Shown: one piece after another, positions 1 to 64,000 of the stretch
Layout of the letters: each line of letters begins with the position of its first letter
How positions within the stretch are numbered: the first letter of the stretch is position 1
Source of the DNA: Selaginella moellendorffii
Lineage: Eukaryota; Plantae; Lycopodiophyta
Assembly (NCBI RefSeq): GCF_000143415.4
Contig: NW_003314271.1
Span: 682,001 to 746,000 of the forward strand
Direction: 5' to 3'
Length of the DNA stretch: 64,000 bases
Translations under genes and position numbers: made by a program
The notes under the pieces: model-generated
Told to the model about the DNA's origin: nothing
The model's database searches: none
Seen by the model: the letters and a program-made list of their open reading frames with translations, nothing else

Positions 1-59
1 TTTTTAGGGCACCAGGGAGAGAGGTAGATTCATGGTTTTAATATTAGATTTTTTAGGGA

Positions 60-2506
60 ATGGAGATATGGAGGCTCGACGCCGCGGAGCCAATCGTCGA
101 GCAGGTACTAGCGGCACAGCCATGGGAGGCGCTTCAGCGGCGTAAGCTATTCCTCCTCAATCACGTCGATGGCGAGATCGAGGACGAGGACGGCGACTGC
201 GCCAATGGCTTCATCCTCGCCGATCCAATACCCTCGCCCTACCTCGGATCGCTGTACGTCGGCGCTTGCAGCGGCCGCAAGCACAAGCGCGAGATCGAGG
301 TCGCCGATCGCCAGCCGGAGCACCAGATTCACGCCAGCGATGCGTGGTTCTGGTGTAATCTCTGCAACAAGGAGGTTTCTTTGGAATCCCTGGCGCTCGC
401 GAGCTCCTCCGGGTGTTCTTGCCTCTTTTGCCGCGGCTGCCTGGAATCGGTGGTGTCCAGCGCGATCAAGGACGTTCTTCGCAGGAATCCTCCCCAGGTT
501 TTGGATCCCGGCCCCAGCAGCAAGTCTCAATCGAAATGCCCCAAGCTGATGATCGATCTCACGAAGGATGACGACGATGGCGACGACGATTGTAGCATCG
601 TTGGCGAGGTAGCGTCTTCTTCTTCGTTTTCTTCTTTGTGGGACTATCTCCCATGTCCGTCACCATTCTGCCGGGGGAAGTTCCGGCTTACAGACATCCA
701 GTCCGTCTCTCCGGATTGTTTCGCCCAGTGGGAGGCAGCAGCGAGCGATGCTCTCGTCAAGAACAGTGGCTCCTTCGTCAAGTGTCCGGGTTGCCAGGTC
801 GTGATCGAGAAAGTCGAGAGTGATTTGCCTCCGGGGCTGGCTCTTTCCGGGGTGCCGGAGTTTGACAGAACGGTTCCTTTCACCGAGCTCGACGACGATG
901 GCAATCGTCTCTCTCGCCGCGCCATGGTGGACAAGGCCGTGAATCGCTTCCGGTGCGTGGTTTGCAGCATGGACTTTTGTGCTGCGTGCTTGCAACGCCC
1001 CTACCACCTGGGAAAGACTTGCGAGGAGTTCTCGCTCGAGAAGAAGGCTCTGCGGTGCATCTACTGCCATCAAGTGTGTCGGCACGAGATCAAGTCGCTC
1101 GTCGGTGGGAATGATGTTGAGAGTTCTTCGGTGAAGGATATACGAAGTCGGCTTGAGCAGGAAGGGGTGGACAGTGGATGGTGCGTGGAGAAAAGTGATC
1201 TTGTCGCGGTGGAGAGGTTGTGCGATCGTGTCTGCCAGGAAATGGAGTGTAGGCAACGGTTGAAACAAGCTTGCACGCGCAACTTACACTGCGGACACCA
1301 CTGCTGTGGAGTGAGAGGTGAACGAAATTGCCTACCTTGTCTAGAGGTACCTTGTTAGGATTGCCTTGTGTCCTTGTGTGTTCTTCCTCGGTTTTATGCT
1401 TTTGGTGGTGGTGGATGCTTCCTTCTTGACGTTCATTTTTCTTCGTGTTTGTTTCCTTGCTTCGAGTTCGTTGAGCTCCTGATTTTGTTTTGTGCTGATG
1501 TAAACGACTGTTTTTTCTTCGTTTATCTCCTCGTCTCCAGTTTTTCATGAATCTATTTCACTTTCTTTTTTGGCAAAATAGTTCACACTCTCTACTTCTT
1601 CCTATACAGGAGGAATGCCAGAAGCAGAAGCTCTCGGGAAAGGCATTGGCGTCTGCTGATGACTTTTGTGGCATTTGCTTGGTGGAGGCGCTTCGTTCGG
1701 CCCCTTCAATTCTGCTTCAGTGTGGCCACATTGTGCACTTGCATTGTGCCAAGCGACAAATCCAGCAGGGATGTCCTGGCCCTCAAATCTCATTCGGGTA
1801 TTTAAAGTGCCCCCAGTGCAAGCTTCTTATGAAGCACAGTAAGCTGGACGCGGACATGCACAAGCATTTGACGACAATGGGCCAGGTAAGCAACACGCTG
1901 GTTTTAAACTTCTTGGAACTCTTTCATTGTTGCGTTTGCAGATCAAAGCCAGAGCAATCAAACGTTTGAAACTGGAAGGAGTTTATGACAAGCTCAAGGC
2001 TAGTTGCAGCTCTGATGACAAACTGACTTCCTTGGCCTTGGAGCAGTACCAGTATTATATGTGCAGCAAGTGCAAGAACCCGTACTACGGTGGGAAGCGG
2101 AACTGCGGCCCAAACTTGGCGTAAGAGTTTTCTTTGTTTGCGCATTGCATAAGTTCTCAGAGCGTGGATTCTTGACAGGGAGGACCAAGGACGGCAATAC
2201 GATCCCTCGGAGCTCGTTTGCGGTGGATGCAGTGCTGGTGCCGATGGCAAGTGCAAGCTTGGTCACGGTAACCAGTTCGTCGAGTTTAAGTGTCGGTTTT
2301 GCTGCTCCATAGCGACGTTTTTCTGCTTTGGAACCATCCACTTCTGTGACAGTTGTCACGGGATCTGGCCTCAGCAGCACTCGAGCTCGTACGTGCTTCC
2401 TCAGTGCAAAGGGCCCCAACACTGTCCACTGGGAATAGCTCACGCTCCAAACGGTAAGGAGCATTGTTTGGGTTGTTCTATGTGTAGAAGCCAAGAGCAG
2501 CTATAG
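60..2506 (+). CDS. RING1-IBR + MYCBP2/Highwire/RPM-1-type RING-Cys-Relay (RCR) E3 ubiquitin ligase; 4 exons (60-1346, 1610-1885, 1942-2120, 2179-2506)
   Basis: GT-AG splicing joins the ORFs in frame. C-terminal half reads ACTRNLHCGHHCCGV...DDFCGICLVEALRSAPSILLQCGHIVHLHC...GPQISFGYLKCPQC...YYMCSKCKNPYYGGKRNC...YDPSELVCGGCS...EFKCRFCCSIATFFCFGTIHFCDSCH...CPLGIAHAPNGKEHCLGCSMCR, colinear with the MYCBP2 C-terminus. N-terminal half has a RING-like CNLC..CSCLFCRGC..CPSPFC and an IBR-like KCPGC..RCVVCSMDFCAAC..YHLGKTC. Confidence 0.85.
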
Positions 2507-2630
2507 AGCAACAAGCCGTACAGATTTTTCCAAAGGCGAAGTTCTGTTCTTTTGTCTCGTTTATTTATTTTGGAGTTTACGCACAGAGGTAAATGTTTTC
2601 TTAAGTATTATTTTAATTTTTTTCTTCTGC

Positions 2631-3342
2631 TTAAACTGGTCCTGGTGCTGGCGCTGGTGCTGGTGCTGGTGGTTTTGCAGGACGAGTGCAACACTCGAGC
2701 GTTCCATCATCGTTGGTTGCGAGAGTAGCAATTTCCACGGCTTCCCCGCTGCCATACTTGCAACTCAGCTTGGTTTCCTCCAACGAGCAGCTGCTTCTTG
2801 GATCTGAGGTACACGTCTTGACATTCAGGGAGGCTTTGTAATTCTCTGTACTGTCGACTCTCTTGCAGGAAGCCAGCAGCATCCCGGTGGTGTCGTTGTA
2901 AGACGTAGCAGTGCAACTATCGAGAAATCCACCGCAGGAGCCGGAGCCAGAGCCGTCGCTGGTCCTGCAACACACCAAGCTTCCATCGTTGTTGCTGGCG
3001 TACGTCTCCAGGTCGACGGGGAAGGAATCGTTGTTGGTGCAAGTGAAGATCGCGTTTGGTGCTAGCGAGGAGGTCCGGAGCTGGCAATCGGCGACTCCAC
3101 CGCACTTTTCTATGCTCAAGCTCGAGTTGTGCATGGAGCCATTAACCGCTCGGCAGCTGGCTTCTAGGACTTTGTTTGTGTAGGAGAGGGGTGTACAGCT
3201 CCTCAGGAAGCCTCCACATTGATCGCAGCTCTACAAAAGAAAAAAAAAAAAGTCAAGTGTTTTGGAGTCTATTTACTATGCTTACCACAAGCAGTAATGT
3301 GTTGATTACAACCACCAGCAAGATGCATACAAGCTTATCCAT
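2631..3342 (-). CDS. Secreted Cys-rich cyanovirin-N-homology (CVNH)-like protein, paralog 1; exons 3342-3286, 3230-2631
   Basis: Signal peptide MDKLVCILLVVVINTLLLV|SC across a phase-0 GT-AG intron; two internal repeats CGGFLxSCT...LxASC...DLxxxAxNxDGxLxCC resembling CVNH F.xSC/L.A.C/DL...N.DG.L motifs; Pro-Ala tail. Confidence 0.7.
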
Positions 3343-4407
3343 TGTGTATGGCTAACACTGACGAGTGGTTTGTTAAAGTACCTTCGTTAGGTCCGGAATG
3401 TATGTTAAAGGACAGAATGGCACCGAAGACAGCCATGTATGTTGTATGTGTATGCTAGGGGCGTATGATACTATGCATGTAAAAGTCTGATGAAAAACAT
3501 TTAATAATAGGATTTTAAGCTTAGTCTATTGTAATTAGTTAAATGACAATAAGCTAAACTAGACCATTTGTTTCTTATAATTAATATTATTGGATAGAAT
3601 GGACTTTGCTCAACTAACAAAAACCTGCTAAAGTAGAATCAAAACAAAGGGAAAGAGGATACCTGAGTGCATTCCAAGTAATGAGTTGCATGTTCTTCAT
3701 ATTCCAAGCTGTTGATTCTATAAAACTTCACATCCTTGGAATTCCGGGGAGACTCGCGTGCGCTCAGTCCAGAATGCAACGACAATTTCCTTAATTCGGT
3801 GTCTGATATTTCTTCCGAGCTGTGCGTCCGAGCCTACCATTGCTTCGGGCCTCCTCTGCCTTTGCTTCATAGCAGCGTCATTAACTCTGTTTTGCCCAGC
3901 AAAGACAGATAAATTTCTTGATTGAACTCCTTTATTTTGTTGGCGAGCTTAATTTGCGTTTTGAGAGCAGATTTCCAAGACCTTTGAGAACAAGAAAACA
4001 AAAGGAACAAGCCTTTAGGTAGTTTAGGAAGAGGTTAAGAATCTCAAGCTTATTGTACTTGCGCGTCTCTCAGCGAAAAAGGAACTGATTTTCTTCGCCG
4101 TAGCTCGTTTGGCGTTCATGGGACGAGCTCTCAAACGGCTATCCGACCTAGAAGACAAACCTGACTGGGACGAAACCATCGCTGCTTCGGCTCGTTTTAT
4201 CCAGCCGTAATCTAGGATGTATTGCTCTGCCCTAAATGCTCTCTCCTCTTCCCCCACCACGAGCGTGACGAGATTCTTTGGCTCGCTTGCCCTCACCGCT
4301 CAGCCTAGAATCCATTGAAAAACTTGGCCATTAAAGTGGTTCATAAACCGGTTGGTTACTAAAACATTTAACCAGTTTATGATACACCGTTCTGTGCTTA
4401 ATACCGG

Positions 4408-18575: not shown

Positions 18576-20555
18576 ATGCGTTGTGTCGCTCTCGAGGAGC
18601 CAGAGAATGCGATCGCGCGCGTTGTTCTTCACTGCCGGAGCTCCGGAGGTGAGCCAACGCTCGCGCGTCTCTCCGATGATCCTCGCCACCGGTGGAGCTG
18701 CTACCTGGGCAATCAGGCCTATGGCCGGTGTGACCGCCCCAATCGATCCTGGGGCGCGTTTGCGGCCATGGAGCAGCGCAATCTCTTCTCCTGGACGATT
18801 GCAATGGCGGCGCTGTCCCAGAATGGGGAGATCCATTGCGCCAAGGCGGTGTTTGATCTCATGCCAATGAGGGATCTCTACGCCTGGAACGTGATGCTCT
18901 CTGCTATCCACGAGAACGATTCGCTGGATGCCCTGGTGGATGCTTTCACGAGAATGCCGGAGAGAGATCCAGTCTCGTGGAACGTAATGGTTGCAGCATT
19001 TGCCCAGAACGGGCAAATGCTCCAAGCCATGGACTTGTTCTTGCGGATGCCTCGCAGGAATGTGATCTCCTGGACAACTATGATTGGAGCTTTGAGCGAT
19101 TGCGAGGCCGGACGCCACGATCTAAAACTCGATGCAATCGTGTTCTTCGATCGAATGCCGCAGAGGAACATTGTGTCTTGGACAGCCATGGTCCATGCCA
19201 GCGCCTCGGCGGATCGGCTGGAAGAGGCGAGAATTCTCTTCGATTCAATGCCTGCGCGCAATCTCGTTTCTTGGAACGTCTTTCTGGCTGGATCGAAGGA
19301 CCTCTCGATCGAGACGCTCGAGAAGATCCCGGCCAAGGACTCTGTGACGCTCAAGACGATCATGAATTGGTACTGCCAGACTGGAAGAACCGCCGACGCT
19401 AAAGCCCTCTTCGATCGATTGCCCGAGAGGGATGTCATGTCATGGACGTGTATGATCCAAGCGAATTCTTGTCAGCTCGATCGAGCCAAGTTTGCCTTCG
19501 ATCTAATGCCGGCATGGAGCGTGGTCTCCATGAATTCCATGGCGGCGGTGTTTGTGAGCCATGGAGAACTTGCTAAAGCAAAAAAGCACTTTGATGTTGG
19601 ACTGGAGAGGAACGTCGTGAGCTGGACCGCGATGATCCAGGCGTTCGATCGAGCCGGAGAGGTGGAAGCAGCGCAGAGAGCTTTCGATCTAATGCCCTCC
19701 TGGGACGAGATCTGCTGGCTGGCGATCCTGGCCGCGAATTCCTCGGATCCGGAAGCGGTCCAGCGCCTGTTCTTCCGTGCGCCGGCTAGATCCGTCCTGG
19801 CATGGAACGCTCTCCTCTCAGCCATCGCACACAGCGGCGGAGCACCGATCGAGGAAACAAAGAGGGTCTTCGATCTGATGCCGGAGCACGACGCCGGATC
19901 GTGGAATGTCTTGATCGCGATCGAGGCAGAGGAGATCGGATCCAGCAAAGTTTTCTCCCACTCTTCTCCTGAGAGAAACGCTCTCTCCTGGGAAGCGCTC
20001 TTGCAAGGTACGGCAAAGTACGGGGACCTCTACGGCACAATGTCCGTACTGGAAAAGATGCCGGCGTGGAGCCTCCTCTCGTGGAATCTAGCTCTTGCAG
20101 CAAATGCCCGCTCCGGGCATTTGGCTAGCCTACGGAGAATATTCTCTACAATGCCGGAACGAGACACGGTATCTTTTGGCACCGCGCTCGCGGCATTTGC
20201 CCACAGCGGGCACGGCACCGACGGCATCCTCCTCTTCCACATCATGCTCCTCGAGGGTATGGCGCCCAGCGATATTTGCTTCGTCCACCTCTTGGTAGCC
20301 TGCAACCACGTCGGCCTCCTTCACGAGGGATTGTGTGTGTTCTCGGGCATGGCCGGCGATCACGGGGTGGCACCCGGGCTCGAGCACTTTTGCTGCGTGG
20401 TGGACATCATGGGAAAGGCCGGGAGGCTGGAATATGCCCGCTGCCTGCTGGAGAATATGCCGTTCGTACCCGATGACGTGGCGTGGGGGAGCTTGTACGG
20501 CGCGTGTGTCGTTCACGGTGACGTGGAGGGTGCCAGGGCACCATCGAACTGGTGA
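18576..20555 (+). CDS. PLS-class pentatricopeptide repeat protein with partial E domain
   Basis: Repeated F..MP.R..VSW..M motifs; C-terminal HFCCVVDIMGKAGRLEYA..MPFVPDDVAWGSLYGAC; intronless. Confidence 0.92.
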   Translation: MRCVALEEPENAIARVVLHCRSSGGEPTLARLSDDPRHRWSCYLGNQAYGRCDRPNRSWGAFAAMEQRNLFSWTIAMAALSQNGEIHCAKAVFDLMPMRDLYAWNVMLSAIHENDSLDALVDAFTRMPERDPVSWNVMVAAFAQNGQMLQAMDLFLRMPRRNVISWTTMIGALSDCEAGRHDLKLDAIVFFDRMPQRNIVSWTAMVHASASADRLEEARILFDSMPARNLVSWNVFLAGSKDLSIETLEKIPAKDSVTLKTIMNWYCQTGRTADAKALFDRLPERDVMSWTCMIQANSCQLDRAKFAFDLMPAWSVVSMNSMAAVFVSHGELAKAKKHFDVGLERNVVSWTAMIQAFDRAGEVEAAQRAFDLMPSWDEICWLAILAANSSDPEAVQRLFFRAPARSVLAWNALLSAIAHSGGAPIEETKRVFDLMPEHDAGSWNVLIAIEAEEIGSSKVFSHSSPERNALSWEALLQGTAKYGDLYGTMSVLEKMPAWSLLSWNLALAANARSGHLASLRRIFSTMPERDTVSFGTALAAFAHSGHGTDGILLFHIMLLEGMAPSDICFVHLLVACNHVGLLHEGLCVFSGMAGDHGVAPGLEHFCCVVDIMGKAGRLEYARCLLENMPFVPDDVAWGSLYGACVVHGDVEGARAPSNW

Positions 20556-28367: not shown

Positions 28368-30884
28368 TCACCAAAAGTCTCCGCAAGAACACACTCCATC
28401 CCTGAAAACATGGAATCGACTCGCGTCTCGGCAAACCACGACTCGCTGCTCGATCCGGGAGATGATCGAGGTGGCTCTGTGGCAGTCGTCGCAAGCGCGG
28501 AGATTCTTGGCGATGTGTATGCTCGTCCCCGGCTTCGTGTTCACCAAAGCACACCCAATGGCCAGCTTCTCGCTATGGCCGCACAGAGCATTCTCTTTCT
28601 CCTCGTCTGCGATGTCAAACAGAGCACCGTCCCAGTCAGGCACGTATCCGGCTTGTTTCAAGCTTACCATCACTTCCTTGAGCTTGGCGAGTATCTGGGA
28701 GCTCTGGGGATGGCTCGTGTCCCCGGCGCAAAACCTGTGAACTCTCCCGGATTCATCAATCCACCAGCTTTGTCCCGGCTTCTTGAAAGCCCGAGCTTTG
28801 TTCCTCATCGTCCGGATGCTCAAGCTCTCCTCAAACATCCCGGCGGCGGCGTAGATGGTGGCCATCACCGAGTACGCTGCAGCATCCCTCTCGTCAGCTC
28901 TTACAATGGAATCGAAAGCAAGCCTACCGGTTTCCACGTTTCTCCATTTCCTGCTCGCCGCCAAGATGGCTCTCCAGATCGTTAAGTTGGGCTGGAAAGG
29001 CATGGTTTTGATCATCGCCATCGCCTCGTCGAGATAGTTTCCTCGGGCTAGAGTGTCCACCAGGCAGCTGTAGTGTTCGATCGTCGCAGCAATCCCGTGA
29101 TCCGAGATCATTGTATCGAAAACCTCCTTGCCTTTCTCGACTAGCCCGGCGTGGCTGCAAGCTGTGAGAATGCAGAGAAACGTGATCCTGTTTGGCTGGA
29201 GACGTTCTTCTTGCATCCTCTGGAAGAGATAGATTGCCTGCTTCGCATGTCCATGGTGACTATATCCTGCGATCAGCGAGTTCCATGTTACAAGTCCCCT
29301 CGTCGTCAAAGAATCAAATACCTCTTGAGCTTCTTGCATATCCGCGCACTTGCCGTAGAAACTAATCAAAGAGCTCGCCACGGCCTCGTCGTGCTCCAGT
29401 CCAGCACTCCGGATGTGCGAGTGGATTGACTTCCCAGTCTGCAAGTCTGCCAAAGATCCGCAGGCTTTGAGCGCAGAAACAAAAGTTTGAGAAACGGGCA
29501 CGATACCTTCGTCGCGCATTCGAGCGTAGAAACGCAAAGCCACCTCCGCTTCACCGGACTGGGAGTAGCCCCGGATCATGGCGTTCCACAGCAGAAGATC
29601 GCGAGGCCGCGTCCTCTCAAAAACCTCTCGTGCCTCGGCCATGCTTCCACACTTGGAGTACATATCCACGAGAGTGCTCGCGACCAAGCTGTGTGCTTCG
29701 TGTCCCTGCTTCACGAGCTGGAAGTGCAAACCCGCGGCTTTCTCCAAGCACACCTTCCTGTCGAGTTGGTCTCTCGAGAGATCTTCCCTGGTGGCGATGC
29801 TTATACAGGCCTCGAGAGCACCGACGTAAGTTAGAGCGTTTGGCACGCATCCTTCCTCTTGCATGCGTGAGAAGAGCTCGAGAGCCAAGTCTCCCTCTCC
29901 ACTTTGAGCGTGTCCCATGATCAAAGCAGTCCAGGAGACAACGTCGTGGCGAGGCATCCGGTCGAAGATCCAGCGCGCCTCTATCATGCTCCCACACTTG
30001 ACATACATATCCACGAGAGCGCTCTCGAGATATATATCCCAAGTCTCTCCAGCGTTCTTGAGCTGGGAGTGTACCGCATTTCCTTTCTCCAACGCCGAGA
30101 CCTTGACAAGCTTCCCCTCGATCTTAGTCCCATCTTCTCGAATCGCCAGTGCCGTGCAAGCAGCAAGCGCGGCGGTGAAAGTTCTCACGTTTGGAACGAA
30201 GCCTCTGTCTTGCATGTGGGAGAAGAGCTCGAGAGCCGTCTCGCCATCGCCACTGTCAACGTATCCCAGGATCAAAGAGTTCCACAAAACCACGTCGTGA
30301 TGGACCATGGCATCAAACACCACCTTTGCGTTCTCCATGTCCCCACACTTGGAGTACATATCCACAAGGCTGCTCGCGACGAAGAGGTTTGATCCAAGAC
30401 CGGTGCTCGCAACCTGGGAGTGAAGAGCCTTTCCCCGATCTAAGCAATCCATAGCTCCTTCCACCGCGAGAGCGGCACAAGCCTTCAAGGCCGCGACGTA
30501 AGTAGCGGCATTTGGCTTGAATCCCCGGCACTTCATCGCGGAGAAGAGATCCAGTGCGACCTCTCCCTGGCCGCGCTGTGCATACCCTTTGATGATCGCG
30601 TTCCACGACACGACGCTGTGCTGCCGGATGCTGTCAAAGGCGCGCCTCGCCTCGACCATGCTCCCGCATTTGGCGTACATGTCGACGATGGTATTGGCGA
30701 CGAAGATATTGGCCCCATCCCCGATGTGGCCGTGGATCCTCGCCCCGGCCTGCAAATCCCGCAGGCTGATGCACGCCTTGAGCGCCGCGAGCTGTGCCGC
30801 AACGCTGGGCGCCACCGATTCCTCCCGCATTCGATCGAACGCCCTGATCGCCTCCCTGGCCTCCTTGGCGCCCACCGCTCGCAT
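28368..30884 (-). CDS. PLS-class PPR protein with E and DYW deaminase domains (organellar C-to-U editing factor type)
   Basis: PLS repeats (LVDMYSKCG); KKPGQSW; HSEKLA and CDDCH zinc motifs; ends HVFRDGVCSCGDFW; likely ATG at 30884. Confidence 0.95.
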   Translation of the reverse strand: MRAVGAKEAREAIRAFDRMREESVAPSVAAQLAALKACISLRDLQAGARIHGHIGDGANIFVANTIVDMYAKCGSMVEARRAFDSIRQHSVVSWNAIIKGYAQRGQGEVALDLFSAMKCRGFKPNAATYVAALKACAALAVEGAMDCLDRGKALHSQVASTGLGSNLFVASSLVDMYSKCGDMENAKVVFDAMVHHDVVLWNSLILGYVDSGDGETALELFSHMQDRGFVPNVRTFTAALAACTALAIREDGTKIEGKLVKVSALEKGNAVHSQLKNAGETWDIYLESALVDMYVKCGSMIEARWIFDRMPRHDVVSWTALIMGHAQSGEGDLALELFSRMQEEGCVPNALTYVGALEACISIATREDLSRDQLDRKVCLEKAAGLHFQLVKQGHEAHSLVASTLVDMYSKCGSMAEAREVFERTRPRDLLLWNAMIRGYSQSGEAEVALRFYARMRDEGIVPVSQTFVSALKACGSLADLQTGKSIHSHIRSAGLEHDEAVASSLISFYGKCADMQEAQEVFDSLTTRGLVTWNSLIAGYSHHGHAKQAIYLFQRMQEERLQPNRITFLCILTACSHAGLVEKGKEVFDTMISDHGIAATIEHYSCLVDTLARGNYLDEAMAMIKTMPFQPNLTIWRAILAASRKWRNVETGRLAFDSIVRADERDAAAYSVMATIYAAAGMFEESLSIRTMRNKARAFKKPGQSWWIDESGRVHRFCAGDTSHPQSSQILAKLKEVMVSLKQAGYVPDWDGALFDIADEEKENALCGHSEKLAIGCALVNTKPGTSIHIAKNLRACDDCHRATSIISRIEQRVVVCRDASRFHVFRDGVCSCGDFW

Positions 30885-32214
30885 TTTCCATAAGAACCCT
30901 AAAACTAAAAACCGAGCTGGACCATCGGTCAAACTCGAAGAATTAAGTATGAGATCGCCTATGCATCCAGCACACTGCGAGATAGAGAATATCTGAGAAA
31001 TCGAATCGATCAAGGATAGGAGATGCCCGAAGTCTTGAGGCACACATCCAAACCAACCAAGAAATTGCCAGAGTGAGATTCAAATTCCAGGACTCTATGG
31101 TTTTGACGAGGAGGAAGTGGGATTGCTATAAAATCTTGACCACTTTAAATTATAGGTTTGTTTTGGCCGGATAAAGAAAGGGCTGACCTTGACTTGACTT
31201 GGACTTCGTTGACTCGACATGGACTCCAGCGTGTCCAACCTTTAAAAACACAACTCTTCTGTTGCAATAGGTGCTCATGGACGAGGACGGTCCATGCTTA
31301 CACTTACTTAAGTGAATACGCTTACTTAAGTCCATGCTTTCGATCACCCCCAGTAGAGTATCATGGGCCTCCTTCAAGTCATCCATCCCATCCAATCTAG
31401 CCAATGTAGAATATTTATTAAAGAAAGCCATGGAGAGCAATCGCCCGAGCACCAGCAACCGTCCTCCTGCTCCTTGGTTCCAATTTCTCTAGCTTCCATC
31501 GTCAGGACTTGAAAGTCCTCGAAGCCGACTTGGTGGATTAACTTTTGGACCTGAGCCTGGGAACCCCTTCCCCAGCCCCTGAATCTCACTGCATCCCAGT
31601 TCTCGACGCCACGGCTTTGTTCGATCCGGTCTCATCCACTTCCTATGTTTCATGATCGGGATCCTCTTGCCACTACACCATCTTGTACGGCCGTGACTTC
31701 CCTTCCGCTGGTTACTTGGCCAAAGATTTCGTTTCCAAGGATAACTCAACGGTGAAATTTGGATGCGGTCGAGACAGCACCGGCCTGCTTGGGCGCCTTG
31801 AGAGCTCGGGCATCTCTTGAGTCGGTAGGAGGGCAACTGCGGAGCTCAGGGTACATGGGCAAGTTTTGGACTCTAGGCATGGTTTACACCCTGATGATCA
31901 AAAACCTCTTTACTACATGAGTATAGCATCCAGACAAAAGCTTAAACTAGTGTTAAAGCTGATGACACTCTCACCAGCATATCAGTGTGACAACATTCTT
32001 AACCTACTTCATTCCCCATCTCTCATCCGAATGATCGGACATTATACACAAAGTTGCAGACGTTCTTGGCACGGAACTTTGCTAATCACCAGAAACTCTG
32101 ACGTACAGTTTCCAGGGTGTTCAGGTCGTTGTGTTAACAAGGATTGGATTTGGAACGGGATGTGATGTGTAGCAAGCCTTCTGGCTTGTGCTACTATTTA
32201 GTATTGTTTGTAGT

Positions 32215-56090: not shown

Positions 56091-56195
56091 ATCCTCTTTC
56101 CGCTAAACAAAAAACAATCTTAAGTTAAATGTTTAAATACAAAACTAATCTAAACATAGTAACTTTAATGCCGAGAGTTAGGGTTCTTGGCAGCT

Positions 56196-57461
56196 ATGGA
56201 GGCTGTGATATTTGGCGACGAGGCGGTGCCTCAGATGCTTCTTCTCCTCTCCCAGGCCGCGCGGGATATCGGCGCTCTGGACCTCTCGTCTCCGCCTGCG
56301 AGGAACAAGAACCCGGTCTCCGCGCCATCGAAATCCAGGTATCATCGCGCATTGCTCCGAGAAGCGCCAAGATCCAGCAACAATGCCCTGGAAGCTAGGC
56401 TTCTCCAGGGGGCCTGCTCGGTCTCTCTTAGCAGCAGGGCGGCCCAAGATCGACCAGAGAGGGAGATGGATCCATCTCCATCGGCAAGGTCAAATTCGAA
56501 TTTCGAGAAGTACAGGGTCTCTGGCCAGGCTAGAATCCTCATGAACAATCTCACAGTTCTAGAGCGAGCGGCGATCGGCGCTGCTGCCGGAGGAATCGCT
56601 GGCGCTTTTACCTACGCTTGCCTGCATCCGCTAGACACGATCAAGACGCGGCTCCAGACGCGAGGAGCGGCAGAGGCGTACAAAGGCTCGATCGACGCAG
56701 CGGTGAAAATCCTCCAGAGCAAAGGCCTGGCGGGGTTTTACAGCGGGATCTCGGCCGTGATCGTCGGCTCCATGGTCTCCTCCGCGATCTACTTTGGAAC
56801 TTGCGAGTTTGGGAAGTCCTTCCTCTCGAAGGTGGCGAAGTTCCCGCCACTGCTCGTGCCGCCGGTGGCCGGAGCCATGGGAAACATCGTCTCGTCGGCC
56901 ATCCTCGTTCCAAAGGAGGTGATCACGCAGAGGATGCAAGCCGGTGCCAAGGGAAGATCCTGGAACGTCTTAATGAGAACTCTGGAGAGGGATGGACTGA
57001 AGGGGCTCTACGTCGGCTACTCGGCAGCTCTGCTCAGGAATCTACCGTCGGGGGTGATCAACTTCTCCACCTTCGAGTACCTGAGAGTGGCGTGGCTGCG
57101 AGTCTCGGGCCAGGATAGCTTGGAGCCATGGCAGAGCGTGAGCTCGGGAGCTCTGGCCGGTGCCATCGCTGCGGCGCTGACGACCCCGATGGACGTCGTC
57201 AAGACGAGGCTGATGACGCAATCGAGAGAGAGGGCGGCGGCGTTCACGTACGAGGGCGTGACGAGAACGCTGGAGAGGATCTGGATCGAGGAAGGATGGG
57301 CCGGGGTGACCAGAGGCATGGGTCCACGGCTGCTCCACAGCGCTTGCTTCTCGGCGATTGGGTTCTTTGCGTTTGAGACGGCGAGGTTTGAGATTCTCAA
57401 GCGCCATGTCGCCAACAAGCAAGCGGAGGTGTTGGAAGTGGAAGTCGACGAAAAGAAGTGA
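56196..57461 (+). CDS. MFL1: Mitochondrial carrier family protein, MITOFERRIN-LIKE 1 (plastid) type
   Basis: Three carrier motifs (PLDTIKTRLQ, PKEVITQRMQ, PMDVVKTRLM); SSAIYFGTCEFGKS and AGAMGNIVSSAI as recalled for MFL1; N-terminal extension; intronless. Confidence 0.85.
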   Translation: MEAVIFGDEAVPQMLLLLSQAARDIGALDLSSPPARNKNPVSAPSKSRYHRALLREAPRSSNNALEARLLQGACSVSLSSRAAQDRPEREMDPSPSARSNSNFEKYRVSGQARILMNNLTVLERAAIGAAAGGIAGAFTYACLHPLDTIKTRLQTRGAAEAYKGSIDAAVKILQSKGLAGFYSGISAVIVGSMVSSAIYFGTCEFGKSFLSKVAKFPPLLVPPVAGAMGNIVSSAILVPKEVITQRMQAGAKGRSWNVLMRTLERDGLKGLYVGYSAALLRNLPSGVINFSTFEYLRVAWLRVSGQDSLEPWQSVSSGALAGAIAAALTTPMDVVKTRLMTQSRERAAAFTYEGVTRTLERIWIEEGWAGVTRGMGPRLLHSACFSAIGFFAFETARFEILKRHVANKQAEVLEVEVDEKK

Positions 57462-62864: not shown

Positions 62865-64000
62865 TTAACCGGAGTTCTCTGCATAGATGTTAGACAGGAG
62901 CGTGTAGGGAGTATCAAGAGCTTGGCGATGGAGGAGCACAAACTTGGAGGCCCTCTCAGCTCTAGCACGGTCACTGTGCGTCTTACATGCGCTCAGCAAG
63001 ATCGTCCAGGACACAAGATCAGGAAGAAACGGCATGCCAAGTATGAGCTCCTCGGCCTCCTCGAGCCTCCCGGCCCGCCCCAGCGCGTCCAGCACGCAAT
63101 GGTAGTGCTCCACCACCGGGACGATGGCGTGATCCTGGATCATCGCTCGAAACTGGCGCACCCCCTGCGCCATCTTCCCGACGTGGCTGGCCGACGTGAG
63201 GATCGAAACCATCGTCACCGCGTCCGCCTCCATGCCCTCCAGCTCCATCACCCGGAACAGCTCCAGCGACTCCTTGTAGCGAGCGGTGCGAGCATACGCC
63301 GCGATCATCCCGTTCCACGACACCGTGTCGCGCACCGGCATGGCATCGAACAGCTCCTTGCCTCGATCCACAAGCCCGTGCTGGCAGAAGATCGCGATCA
63401 TGGCGTTCCAAGGCAGTACCAAGCTCTTGTGATGAACCGGCATCGTCTCAAAGAGCTCCACTGCCACCGAGAGCTGCCGGTTGTGCGCGTAGGCCAGGAT
63501 CATCGCTGTCCAGGTGACCGCGTCCCTGTCCGCCACCCCGTCGAAGATCTTCTTGGCTCGATCCAGCTCGCCGTGCTGCGCGAACGCCGTCAGCATCGCG
63601 GTCTTGGCAACCGACGTTGGCTCCGGCATCCTCTCGAAAAGAAGCTTGGCCGACTCAAGCTCCCCGGCCTGAGCATACGCCTGGATCATGGTCGTCCACG
63701 AGATCCTGTCACTCTCCGGCATCGCCTCGAAAAGCCCACGAGCCTGGCTCAAGCACCCGGCCTCGGCATTCGCAGAAACCATCGCGTTCCACGACACCAC
63801 GTCCCTCCCCGGCATCAGACCGAAGAGCTCCCTGGCTTGATCCAGCTGCCCGTTGCTGGAGAAGGCTGCGATCACTGCGTTCCACGACACCACGTCCGGC
63901 TCTGGGATCCGGTCGAAGAGCTCTTTGGCCTGGACCACCCTCTTGCTCACTGCGTATGCCTGGATCATCGAGTTGAGGCACACCACGTCCCACTCAGGCA
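62865..64000 (-). CDS. PLS-class PPR protein with E domain, 5' end outside the window
   Basis: PLS/SS repeats; HYHCVLDALGRAGRLEEA..MPFLPDLVSWTILLSAC..PYTLLSNIYA. Confidence 0.93.
   Translation of the reverse strand, partial: PEWDVVCLNSMIQAYAVSKRVVQAKELFDRIPEPDVVSWNAVIAAFSSNGQLDQARELFGLMPGRDVVSWNAMVSANAEAGCLSQARGLFEAMPESDRISWTTMIQAYAQAGELESAKLLFERMPEPTSVAKTAMLTAFAQHGELDRAKKIFDGVADRDAVTWTAMILAYAHNRQLSVAVELFETMPVHHKSLVLPWNAMIAIFCQHGLVDRGKELFDAMPVRDTVSWNGMIAAYARTARYKESLELFRVMELEGMEADAVTMVSILTSASHVGKMAQGVRQFRAMIQDHAIVPVVEHYHCVLDALGRAGRLEEAEELILGMPFLPDLVSWTILLSACKTHSDRARAERASKFVLLHRQALDTPYTLLSNIYAENSG

What the first reader, a model, noticed from the sequence alone, without database searches (positions are those of the whole stretch)
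1260..2506. MYCBP2-type RING-Cys-Relay (RCR) E3 ligase with intact catalytic residues in a land plant
Seen: once spliced, exons 2-4 encode a RING-H2 and a tandem-cysteine domain colinear with the C-terminus of MYCBP2/Highwire/RPM-1. The ORF track misses the last exon in this frame. Established: MYCBP2 relays ubiquitin through C4520 and C4572 and esterifies threonine, using H4583 and an aromatic pocket (F4573/F4578/F4586). Here the upstream Cys (GGKRNC, codon 2104-2106), the downstream Cys (FFCFG, codon 2324-2326) and the His (FCDSCH) are conserved; the pocket reads F/F/W. Inference: an active non-lysine ubiquitin ligase of a class characterised in animals and not known to me from flowering plants.
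Basis: partly seen in the sequence, partly recalled or inferred. Interest (0 to 1): 0.9.

Follow-up and report, generated by a model that had tools for sequence, protein, structure and literature searches.

The report
Small plant RING-Cys-Relay ubiquitin ligase gene
This spikemoss (Selaginella) gene encodes a 689-residue protein whose tail is a complete copy of the two-cysteine "relay" ubiquitin-ligase module so far studied only in the giant animal protein MYCBP2, giving a small and so far unstudied plant version of that enzyme class.

Summary
Window 60-2506 (+) is a four-exon gene, Selaginella moellendorffii LOC9631788, encoding 689 aa. All three introns appear in transcript contigs from four studies.

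Exons 2-4, plus the end of exon 1, align colinearly with the last ~307 residues of vertebrate MYCBP2 (38% identity, E 1e-72) and with the solved RCR structure 5O6C. C576, C630, H641 and E592 sit exactly at C4520, C4572, H4583 and E4534. The predicted fold matches 5O6C (Z 17.5).

The protein is not a MYCBP2 orthologue. Its N-terminal half is an RBR-type RING1-IBR module with a SAP-like domain, and it has no RING2.

The same architecture occurs in streptophyte algae, mosses, lycophytes, ferns and many protists. No seed plant turned up, but the searches cannot prove absence. The module family has at least 742 clusters at E<1e-30.

Both cysteines and the histidine are essentially invariant in 162 representatives. 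The third "threonine-pocket" aromatic (W644) is not conserved, so acceptor preference is open.

About half of the transcripts in three of four runs use a frameshifting alternative donor that removes the RCR module.

Databases already auto-name relatives "highwire-like", "MYCBP2" or "RCR-type E3". I found no paper on a plant RCR. Activity is inferred, not shown.

The parts
60..2506 (+). Coding region of the gene (S. moellendorffii LOC9631788 allele), 4 exons, 689 aa
   Evidence: The spliced translation has the same length as P0001 with 9 substitutions. Transcript contigs cover 100-2589 with all junctions.
60..1346 (+). Exon 1 (residues 1-429): N-terminal acidic motif, RBR-type RING1, IBR, SAP-like domain, and the start of the pre-RING zinc finger
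   Evidence: ORF 60-1358. It is 44% identical over 98% of its length to the moss protein. Alignment A2.
354..671 (+). RBR-type RING1 (C99, C102, C119, C121, C124, C127 ... C199, C204) with a long low-confidence insert
   Evidence: The A2 profile matches RNF144A RING1 (1wim/6l99, E 3e-5) and HOIP RING1. The AF2 model matches 1wim at Z 10.0 and HOIP RING1 at Z 7.7.
783..1022 (+). IBR domain (C242-C321) with an insert (GVPEFDRT... motif)
   Evidence: Pfam IBR_1 E 0.008, below cutoff. The model aligns with RING1-IBR of ARIH2 (Z 8.7), HOIL-1 (Z 8.4) and parkin (Z 6.9), and with the RNF31 IBR (Z 5.1). Foldseek gives RNF216 and HOIP RBR at E 2e-4.
1095..1241 (+). SAP-like helical domain (residues ~346-394)
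   Evidence: Model residues 262-310 align with the SAP domains of MANF and CDNF (Z 4.1-4.6) and with the Rho N-terminal domain. These are weak matches, and there is no Pfam hit.
1233..1346 (+). Pre-RING zinc finger (C392...C427, continuing to C432 in exon 2 at 1610-1618), shared with MYCBP2
   Evidence: The BLASTP alignment with python MYCBP2 starts here. A2 profile positions 345-395 also hit the giant MYCBP2-type proteins.
1317..1318 (+). Alternative 5' splice site (exon ends at 1317). Joined to 1610 it shifts the frame and stops after residue 435, so no RCR module is made.
   Evidence: A joint skipping 292 nt is present in X1-X3, at depth equal to or above the canonical joint. Translation.
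1347..1609 (+). Intron 1 (263 bp, GT-AG, phase 0)
   Evidence: The joint is seen in 4 of 4 runs. Position and phase are shared with Physcomitrium and Ceratopteris.
1610..1885 (+). Exon 2 (residues 430-521): RING-H2 (C449, C452, C467, H469, H472, C475, C496, C499; codons 1667-1819)
   Evidence: Matches 5O6C chain 8-72 at E 1e-16. Pfam zf-RING_2 E 8e-6. All eight ligands are invariant in 162 representatives.
1886..1941 (+). Intron 2 (56 bp, GT-AG, phase 0)
   Evidence: The joint is seen in 4 of 4 runs. Conserved in moss and fern.
1942..2120 (+). Exon 3 (residues 522-581): linker helices, the first TC-domain zinc pair (C562, C565), and the upstream catalytic Cys C576 (codon 2104-2106)
   Evidence: Matches 5O6C chain 87-144, with C576 at chain 143, which is C4520. 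Cys in 161 of 162 representatives.
2121..2178 (+). Intron 3 (58 bp, GT-AG, phase 2), splitting the mediator-loop region
   Evidence: The joint is seen in 4 of 4 runs. Moss and fern have an intron of the same phase within 11 alignment columns.
2179..2506 (+). Exon 4 (residues 581-689 plus stop): the rest of the tandem-cysteine domain. It holds E592, the downstream catalytic Cys C630 (2324-2326), F631, F636, H641 (2357-2359) and W644.
   Evidence: Matches 5O6C chain 149-259 at E 1e-25. C630 and H641 are invariant in 162 representatives. AF2 model against 5O6C gives Z 17.5.
2589..2680 (+). Intron in the 3' UTR (about 92 bp, GT-AG)
   Evidence: Contigs in all four runs end their match at 2589 and continue with the sequence that starts at 2681 (table 7).

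Best explanation
The gene encodes an active RING-Cys-Relay (RCR) type E3 ubiquitin ligase.

Proposed mechanism, inferred from the MYCBP2 paradigm:
1. The RING-H2 domain (C449-C499) binds a ubiquitin-charged E2.
2. Ubiquitin is transthiolated to C576, which lies in a flexible mediator loop.
3. Ubiquitin is relayed within the molecule to C630.
4. The C630/H641/E592 triad discharges ubiquitin onto a substrate nucleophile, most probably a Ser/Thr hydroxyl, giving an ester-linked ubiquitin.

The N-terminal half has an RBR-type RING1, an IBR and a SAP-like domain, but no RING2. It most likely provides substrate, ubiquitin or second-E2 binding, in place of the huge scaffold of animal MYCBP2.

The gene was inherited vertically within streptophytes from an old eukaryotic family of short RING1-IBR-RCR proteins.

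Shown: the gene structure, expression, homology, residue conservation and predicted fold. Inferred: transthiolation, relay, acceptor chemistry and the role of the N-terminus.
For: Homology to MYCBP2:
- Colinear matches to the MYCBP2 RCR chains 5O6C and 6T7F at E 1e-16, 9e-4 and 1e-25.
- 38% identity and E 1e-72 over 299 residues, running to the very C-terminus of vertebrate MYCBP2.
- The AF2 model (pLDDT 82) matches 5O6C with Foldseek E 2e-20 and VIA Z 17.5 over 227 residues. The next unrelated hit is Z 7.7.
- The loop after C576 has low confidence, as expected for a mobile mediator loop.

Residue conservation:
- All 8 RING ligands, both catalytic Cys and the His are invariant or nearly so in 162 representative modules. 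The Glu is E or D in 140 of 162.
- These residues are invariant in 22 plant and protist sequences.

Expression: spliced transcripts occur in four studies.

Vertical descent:
- Land-plant sequences form a clade (support 96), and land plants plus streptophyte algae form a clade (support 100).
- Two intron positions and phases are identical in moss, lycophyte and fern; the third has the same phase within a gappy stretch of the alignment.

Mechanism of the reference enzyme: review PMC9527308 and PMC9120709.
Against: - No biochemical data exist for this or any short RCR protein that I could find.
- The third residue of the threonine pocket (F4586 in MYCBP2, W644 here) is Arg in most plant orthologues and variable in short forms.
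- The Glu is replaced by His, Gln or Thr in some family members.
- In three of four runs, about half or more of the transcripts use a frameshifting donor that removes the RCR module.
- The predicted RING/TC domain arrangement differs from the crystal structure (rmsd 6.5 A, TM 0.61).
Confidence: 0.75

Rival explanations
1. It is an active two-cysteine relay E3, but its acceptor preference differs from MYCBP2's. It might target lysine, serine rather than threonine, or a non-protein hydroxyl or amine.
For: The third pocket position is not conserved. It is W in Selaginella, R in most plant orthologues, and Q/A/R/P in short forms. Position 631 is W rather than F in most short forms. The Glu varies.
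Against: F631, F636, H641 and E592 of this particular protein match MYCBP2, and W644 keeps an aromatic at the third site.
Confidence: 0.17
2. The tandem-cysteine domain is only a structural zinc module. The protein then acts as a plain RING (or RING1) E3, or as a non-catalytic adaptor, without relay.
For: No assay exists. Abundant transcripts lack the RCR module.
Against: The two non-zinc-ligand cysteines and the His are invariant across 162 clusters spanning plants, protists and animals. That is hard to explain without catalysis.
Confidence: 0.06
3. The gene is an artefact: a contaminant, a pseudogene or a wrong gene model.
For: None found.
Against: - GT-AG introns are supported by transcripts in four studies.
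- The model has the same length as the independent NCBI model on a 2.76-Mb contig.
- Neighbouring genes are PPR-DYW and mitochondrial-carrier genes typical of a plant nucleus.
- The sequence is nested in a streptophyte clade, and the three intron positions are shared with moss and fern: two identical, the third of the same phase within a gappy region.
Confidence: 0.01

Closest known systems
MYCBP2 / Phr1 / Highwire / RPM-1 (animal RCR E3, EC 2.3.2.33; structures 5O6C, 6T7F)
   Same: - The pre-RING zinc finger, RING-H2, linker helices and tandem-cysteine domain are colinear to the C-terminus (38% identity, E 1e-72).
- C4520, C4572, H4583, E4534, F4573 and F4578 are identical, and F4586 is W here.
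- The predicted fold matches at Z 17.5.
   Different: - This protein is 689 aa against about 4,600 aa.
- No sequence equivalent to the long N-terminal scaffold of MYCBP2 (RCC1-like, PHR, FBXO45-binding and Myc-binding regions, listed in PMC9120709) can be present.
- The N-terminus is instead RBR-type RING1-IBR plus a SAP-like domain.
- The giant forms make their own clade, separate from the plant clade.
RBR E3 ligases (RNF144A, HOIL-1, HOIP, ARIH1/2, parkin, RNF216)
   Same: The N-terminal half has an RBR-type RING1, including the C-x-C variant seen in RNF144A and HOIP, followed by an IBR. Support: profile E 3e-5; Z 10.0 for 1wim and 8.4-8.7 for RING1-IBR of HOIL-1 and ARIH2.
   Different: There is no RING2/Rcat domain with its catalytic cysteine. 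Structural alignments stop at the IBR. The catalytic module is an RCR instead.
Short RCR proteins of protists that databases auto-name 'RCR-type E3 ubiquitin transferase' (Cavenderia fasciculata F4PV64, Anaeramoeba flamelloides), and Physcomitrium patens XP_024395653.1, 'highwire-like'
   Same: They share the RING1-IBR-zinc finger-RING-TC architecture. 67 of about 159 short representatives carry all three N-terminal parts. The catalytic residues are the same.
   Different: These are only automated names. I found no experimental or descriptive paper on any of them.

Membership tests
RCR (RING-Cys-Relay) E3 module | RING-H2 (C3H2C3) domain directly upstream of the TC domain | tested here: met
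   Matches 5O6C chain 8-72 at E 1e-16. The eight ligands are invariant. Pfam zf-RING_2 scores 26.4 bits, just under the 27.3 cutoff.
RCR (RING-Cys-Relay) E3 module | Tandem-cysteine domain fold with its zinc ligands | tested here: met
   Exons 3 and 4 align to chain 87-259. 16 Cys/His ligand positions are invariant or nearly so in the alignments. The AF2 model matches 5O6C at Z 17.5 over 227 residues.
RCR (RING-Cys-Relay) E3 module | Upstream catalytic Cys (C4520) in a mobile loop | tested here: met
   C576 aligns with chain position 143, which is C4520. Cys in 161 of 162 representatives. The adjacent loop has pLDDT <50.
RCR (RING-Cys-Relay) E3 module | Downstream catalytic Cys (C4572) with the His (H4583) and Glu (E4534) triad | tested here: met
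   C630, H641 and E592 align exactly. Cys and His are present in 162 of 162 representatives, and Glu/Asp in 140 of 162. The triad is described in PMC9527308.
RCR (RING-Cys-Relay) E3 module | Hydrophobic threonine pocket (F4573/F4578/F4586) | tested here: inconclusive
   This protein has F631, F636 and W644. The third position is R in most plant orthologues and variable in short forms.
RCR (RING-Cys-Relay) E3 module | E2-to-Cys transthiolation, Cys-to-Cys relay, and esterification activity | not testable with these tools
   This needs biochemistry.
PHR proteins (full-length MYCBP2 orthologues) | Giant scaffold with RCC1-like, PHR, FBXO45-binding and Myc-binding regions | tested here: not met
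   The protein has 689 aa. Its N-terminal 390 residues are RING1-IBR-SAP-like. The giants form a separate clade.
RBR E3 ligases | RING1 followed by an IBR | tested here: met
   The Pfam IBR_1 hit is only E 0.008.
RBR E3 ligases | RING2/Rcat domain with a catalytic Cys | tested here: not met
   Nothing between the IBR and the pre-RING zinc finger matches an Rcat. RBR structural alignments end at model residue ~246.

The most novel reading that the evidence does not exclude
Short RING1-IBR-RCR proteins are the ancestral, pan-eukaryotic form of the RCR ligase class. On this reading, animal MYCBP2 is a derived giant. The RBR-type RING1-IBR works together with the RCR module as a hybrid two-headed transthiolating E3, for example as a second E2~Ub or allosteric ubiquitin site. 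Streptophytes kept this ester-forming ligase up to ferns and lost it in seed plants. In Selaginella, its output is gated by an alternative splice that removes the catalytic module.
Probability: 0.3. Interest if true: 0.75.

Novelty: new variant of a known kind. Interest (0 to 1): 0.58.

Why it matters
RCR ligases are treated in the literature as a one-protein class. The known example is MYCBP2, a 0.5-MDa neuronal protein that is hard to handle.

A 689-residue plant protein with the complete catalytic module would be useful in three ways:
- It is a tractable model for the relay mechanism and for ester-linked ubiquitination.
- It would be the first candidate dedicated hydroxyl-directed E3 in plants. 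The moss orthologue lies in Physcomitrium, where gene targeting is routine.
- It links RBR and RCR ligases in one polypeptide, which bears on how transthiolating E3s evolved.

The apparent restriction to non-seed plants, if confirmed, poses a clear question: which function was lost or replaced in seed plants?

Tried and rejected
- Pfam has no tandem-cysteine-domain model, so exon 4 gives no Pfam hit. The PDB sequence search was needed instead.
- Pao et al. 2018 and Mabbitt et al. 2020 are not held in the library. I could not check whether they mention non-animal homologues.
- The third word-based protein search, with a full-length plant profile, was saturated by candidates and returned only 7 proteins. 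It adds little on the seed-plant question.
- The representatives search shows only the best 150 of 2,870 hits and carries no taxonomy. Absence from seed plants, liverworts and hornworts therefore rests on non-detection. It is not proven.
- The ESM Atlas look-up gave only animal MYCBP2 fragments and ciliate clusters.
- I considered a link to flagellated sperm, because the plant distribution matches lineages with motile sperm. I set it aside because a dictyostelid (Cavenderia), which I know to lack flagella, has the gene. The gene is also found in transcript assemblies from many Selaginella and Physcomitrium runs.
- Contamination or horizontal transfer is rejected.

Full report
**What is in the sequence.**
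Reading 1-3600 and the ORF list gives a four-exon gene on the + strand. The exons are 60-1346, 1610-1885, 1942-2120 and 2179-2506. The introns are GT-AG and 263, 56 and 58 bp long. The product is 689 aa.

A protein search with exon 1 returned a 689-aa NCBI protein, 'uncharacterized protein LOC9631788 [Selaginella moellendorffii]', on a 2.76-Mb contig. My spliced model has the same length and differs at 9 residues.

The window also carries PPR-DYW and mitochondrial-carrier genes, so this is ordinary plant nuclear DNA. The organism is a lycophyte: a land plant, but not a flowering plant.

**Transcript support.**
Contigs of four runs from four studies were laid on 1-2700. All carry the joints 1346|1610, 1885|1942 and 2120|2179. 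One 2530-nt contig (run X6) spans the whole coding region.

Run X1 reads T at 2120, which gives the A581V difference seen in P0001. Both alleles are therefore expressed.

Two further observations came out of this:
- An alternative donor at 1317|1318, joined to the same acceptor, is present in X1, X2 and X3. Its contig depth is equal to or above the canonical joint (277 vs 156, 50 vs 38, 10 vs 5.6). It shifts the frame and stops after residue 435, before the RING-H2. Contig depths are rough, but a large share of the mRNA cannot encode the RCR module.
- A further GT-AG intron lies in the 3' UTR (2589-2680).

**Is it an RCR module?**
Each exon translated on its own hits the MYCBP2 RCR chains 5O6C and 6T7F colinearly:

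| Exon | 5O6C chain residues | E-value |
|---|---|---|
| 2 | 8-72 | 1e-16 |
| 3 | 87-144 | 9e-4 |
| 4 | 149-259 | 1e-25 |

Chain index + 4377 gives human numbering. The key residues then map as follows:

| This protein | Motif / codon | MYCBP2 |
|---|---|---|
| C576 | GGKRNC, 2104-2106 | C4520 |
| C630 | FFCFG, 2324-2326 | C4572 |
| H641 | DSCH, 2357-2359 | H4583 |
| E592 | | E4534 |
| F631 / F636 / W644 | | F4573 / F4578 / F4586 |

Against a full-length vertebrate MYCBP2 the alignment runs from residue 391 to the last residue of both proteins (38% identity, E 1e-72). It includes a pre-RING zinc finger that lies upstream of the crystallised construct.

An AlphaFold2 model of residues 430-689 has mean pLDDT 82. 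It finds only 5O6C and 6T7F at significance: Foldseek E 2e-20, and VIA Z 17.5 over 227 residues against Z 7.7 for the next, RING-only, hit. The stretch right after C576 is predicted with pLDDT <50. That fits the mobile upstream site described for MYCBP2 (PMC9120709).

The reference mechanism comes from reviews PMC9527308 and PMC9120709:
- ubiquitin passes from the E2 to an upstream Cys;
- it is relayed about 24 A to a downstream Cys;
- a Cys-His-Glu triad then acts, and a hydrophobic pocket selects threonine.

**The rest of the protein.**
The N-terminal 390 residues are conserved in plant orthologues.
- A profile of this region hits the RING1 domains of the RBR ligases RNF144A (E 3e-5) and HOIP.
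- An AlphaFold2 model of residues 85-448 (pLDDT 81.5) aligns with RING1, or RING1-IBR, of RNF144A (Z 10.0), ARIH2 (8.7), HOIL-1 (8.4), HOIP and parkin.
- Foldseek also matches it to the RNF216 and HOIP RBR structures (E about 2e-4).
- Residues ~346-394 resemble SAP domains weakly (Z 4-4.6).
- No RING2/Rcat is present.

The architecture is therefore RING1-IBR-SAP-like-zinc finger-RING-H2-TC. It is an RBR front end joined to an RCR catalytic end, which agrees with two first-stage notes on this stretch. It is not a MYCBP2 orthologue in the full-length sense.

**Relatives.**
- Word-based searches found orthologues in mosses (Ceratodon, Physcomitrium), lycophytes (Diphasiastrum) and ferns (Adiantum, Ceratopteris, Psilotum, Pteridium). 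They also found homologues in protists (Physarum, Anaeramoeba, Protocruzia, Rhizomastix).
- An exhaustive profile search of 1.84 billion representatives found 742 clusters at E<1e-30 and 1,830 at E<1e-10. Most are 500-800 aa with the module at the C-terminus, and a minority are giants of 2,000-4,700 aa.
- The representatives closest to the plant N-terminus are the streptophyte algae Mesostigma, Chara and Chlorokybus. Others are amoebozoans (Cavenderia, Ceratiomyxa, Protostelium) and the stramenopile Platysulcus.
- 67 of about 159 short representatives carry RING1, IBR and the pre-RING finger.
- In a FastTree of 165 modules, land plants form a clade (96), land plants plus streptophyte algae form a clade (100), and the giants form one separate clade (100).
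- The three introns of the RCR region sit at the same alignment columns and phases in Selaginella, Physcomitrium and Ceratopteris. Two are identical, and the third has the same phase within a gappy region.

Together these results argue for old, vertical inheritance. No seed-plant, liverwort or hornwort protein appeared in any search. The tools cannot prove absence.

**Residue census.**
In 162 representative modules:
- the eight RING ligands, C630 and H641 are invariant;
- C576 is Cys in 161;
- E592 is E or D in 140;
- position 631 is W or F, and position 636 is F;
- position 644 is variable in short forms, and is R in most plant orthologues.

The relay chemistry is thus under strong constraint, while the threonine pocket is only partly conserved. 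I commit to 'active two-cysteine relay E3' with good confidence, and to 'esterifies Ser/Thr' with less.

**What is known.**
Automated pipelines already name relatives:
- 'E3 ubiquitin-protein ligase highwire-like' (Physcomitrium, NCBI);
- 'E3 ubiquitin-protein ligase MYCBP2' (JGI);
- 'RCR-type E3 ubiquitin transferase' (UniRef, Cavenderia and Anaeramoeba).

Full-text searches found no paper that describes an RCR ligase in plants or analyses the short family. Reviews present MYCBP2 as the RCR example. The two primary RCR papers are not held, so a remark there cannot be excluded.

**Verdict.**
- It is a new variant of a known kind: a small RING1-IBR-RCR ligase of non-seed plants and protists.
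- Enzyme activity, acceptor chemistry, the role of the RBR-like half and the seed-plant loss remain to be tested.

Noticed in passing
window 1317-1318 / 1610: An alternative 5' splice site lies 29 nt upstream of the canonical one. It is used in three of four runs at a contig depth equal to or above the canonical joint. It frameshifts and truncates the protein at residue 435, leaving RING1-IBR-SAP-like only, or it makes an NMD target.
   Followed up: partly
window 2589-2680: A GT-AG intron lies in the 3' UTR, more than 80 nt downstream of the stop codon. The transcript continues past 2681, antisense to the neighbouring minus-strand gene.
   Followed up: partly
window 2631-3134 (-), with a probable signal-peptide exon near 3253-3342 (-): A convergent neighbour encodes a Cys-rich protein with a CVNH (cyanovirin-N homology) lectin domain (Pfam 24.6 bits against a cutoff of 24.5) and a (PA)n tail. 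It overlaps the 3' UTR of the RCR gene in antisense.
   Followed up: partly
window 18576-20555 (+), 28368-31043 (-), 62865-63986 (-): Three pentatricopeptide-repeat genes, one with E, E+ and DYW deaminase domains (an organelle RNA-editing factor type).
   Followed up: no
window 56187-57461 (+): A mitochondrial carrier family gene (Pfam Mito_carr, E 9e-58).
   Followed up: no
L003 (Ceratopteris richardii CM035417.1) 3001-43816: The fern orthologue keeps the same three intron positions, but two of its introns are 13 kb and 26 kb long, against 263 and 56 bp in Selaginella.
   Followed up: partly
P0001 residues 30-50 (window ~150-210): A strongly conserved acidic N-terminal motif (HVxGEFEDEDGDxATxFILADP) is present in all plant orthologues. 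It matches no known domain.
   Followed up: no
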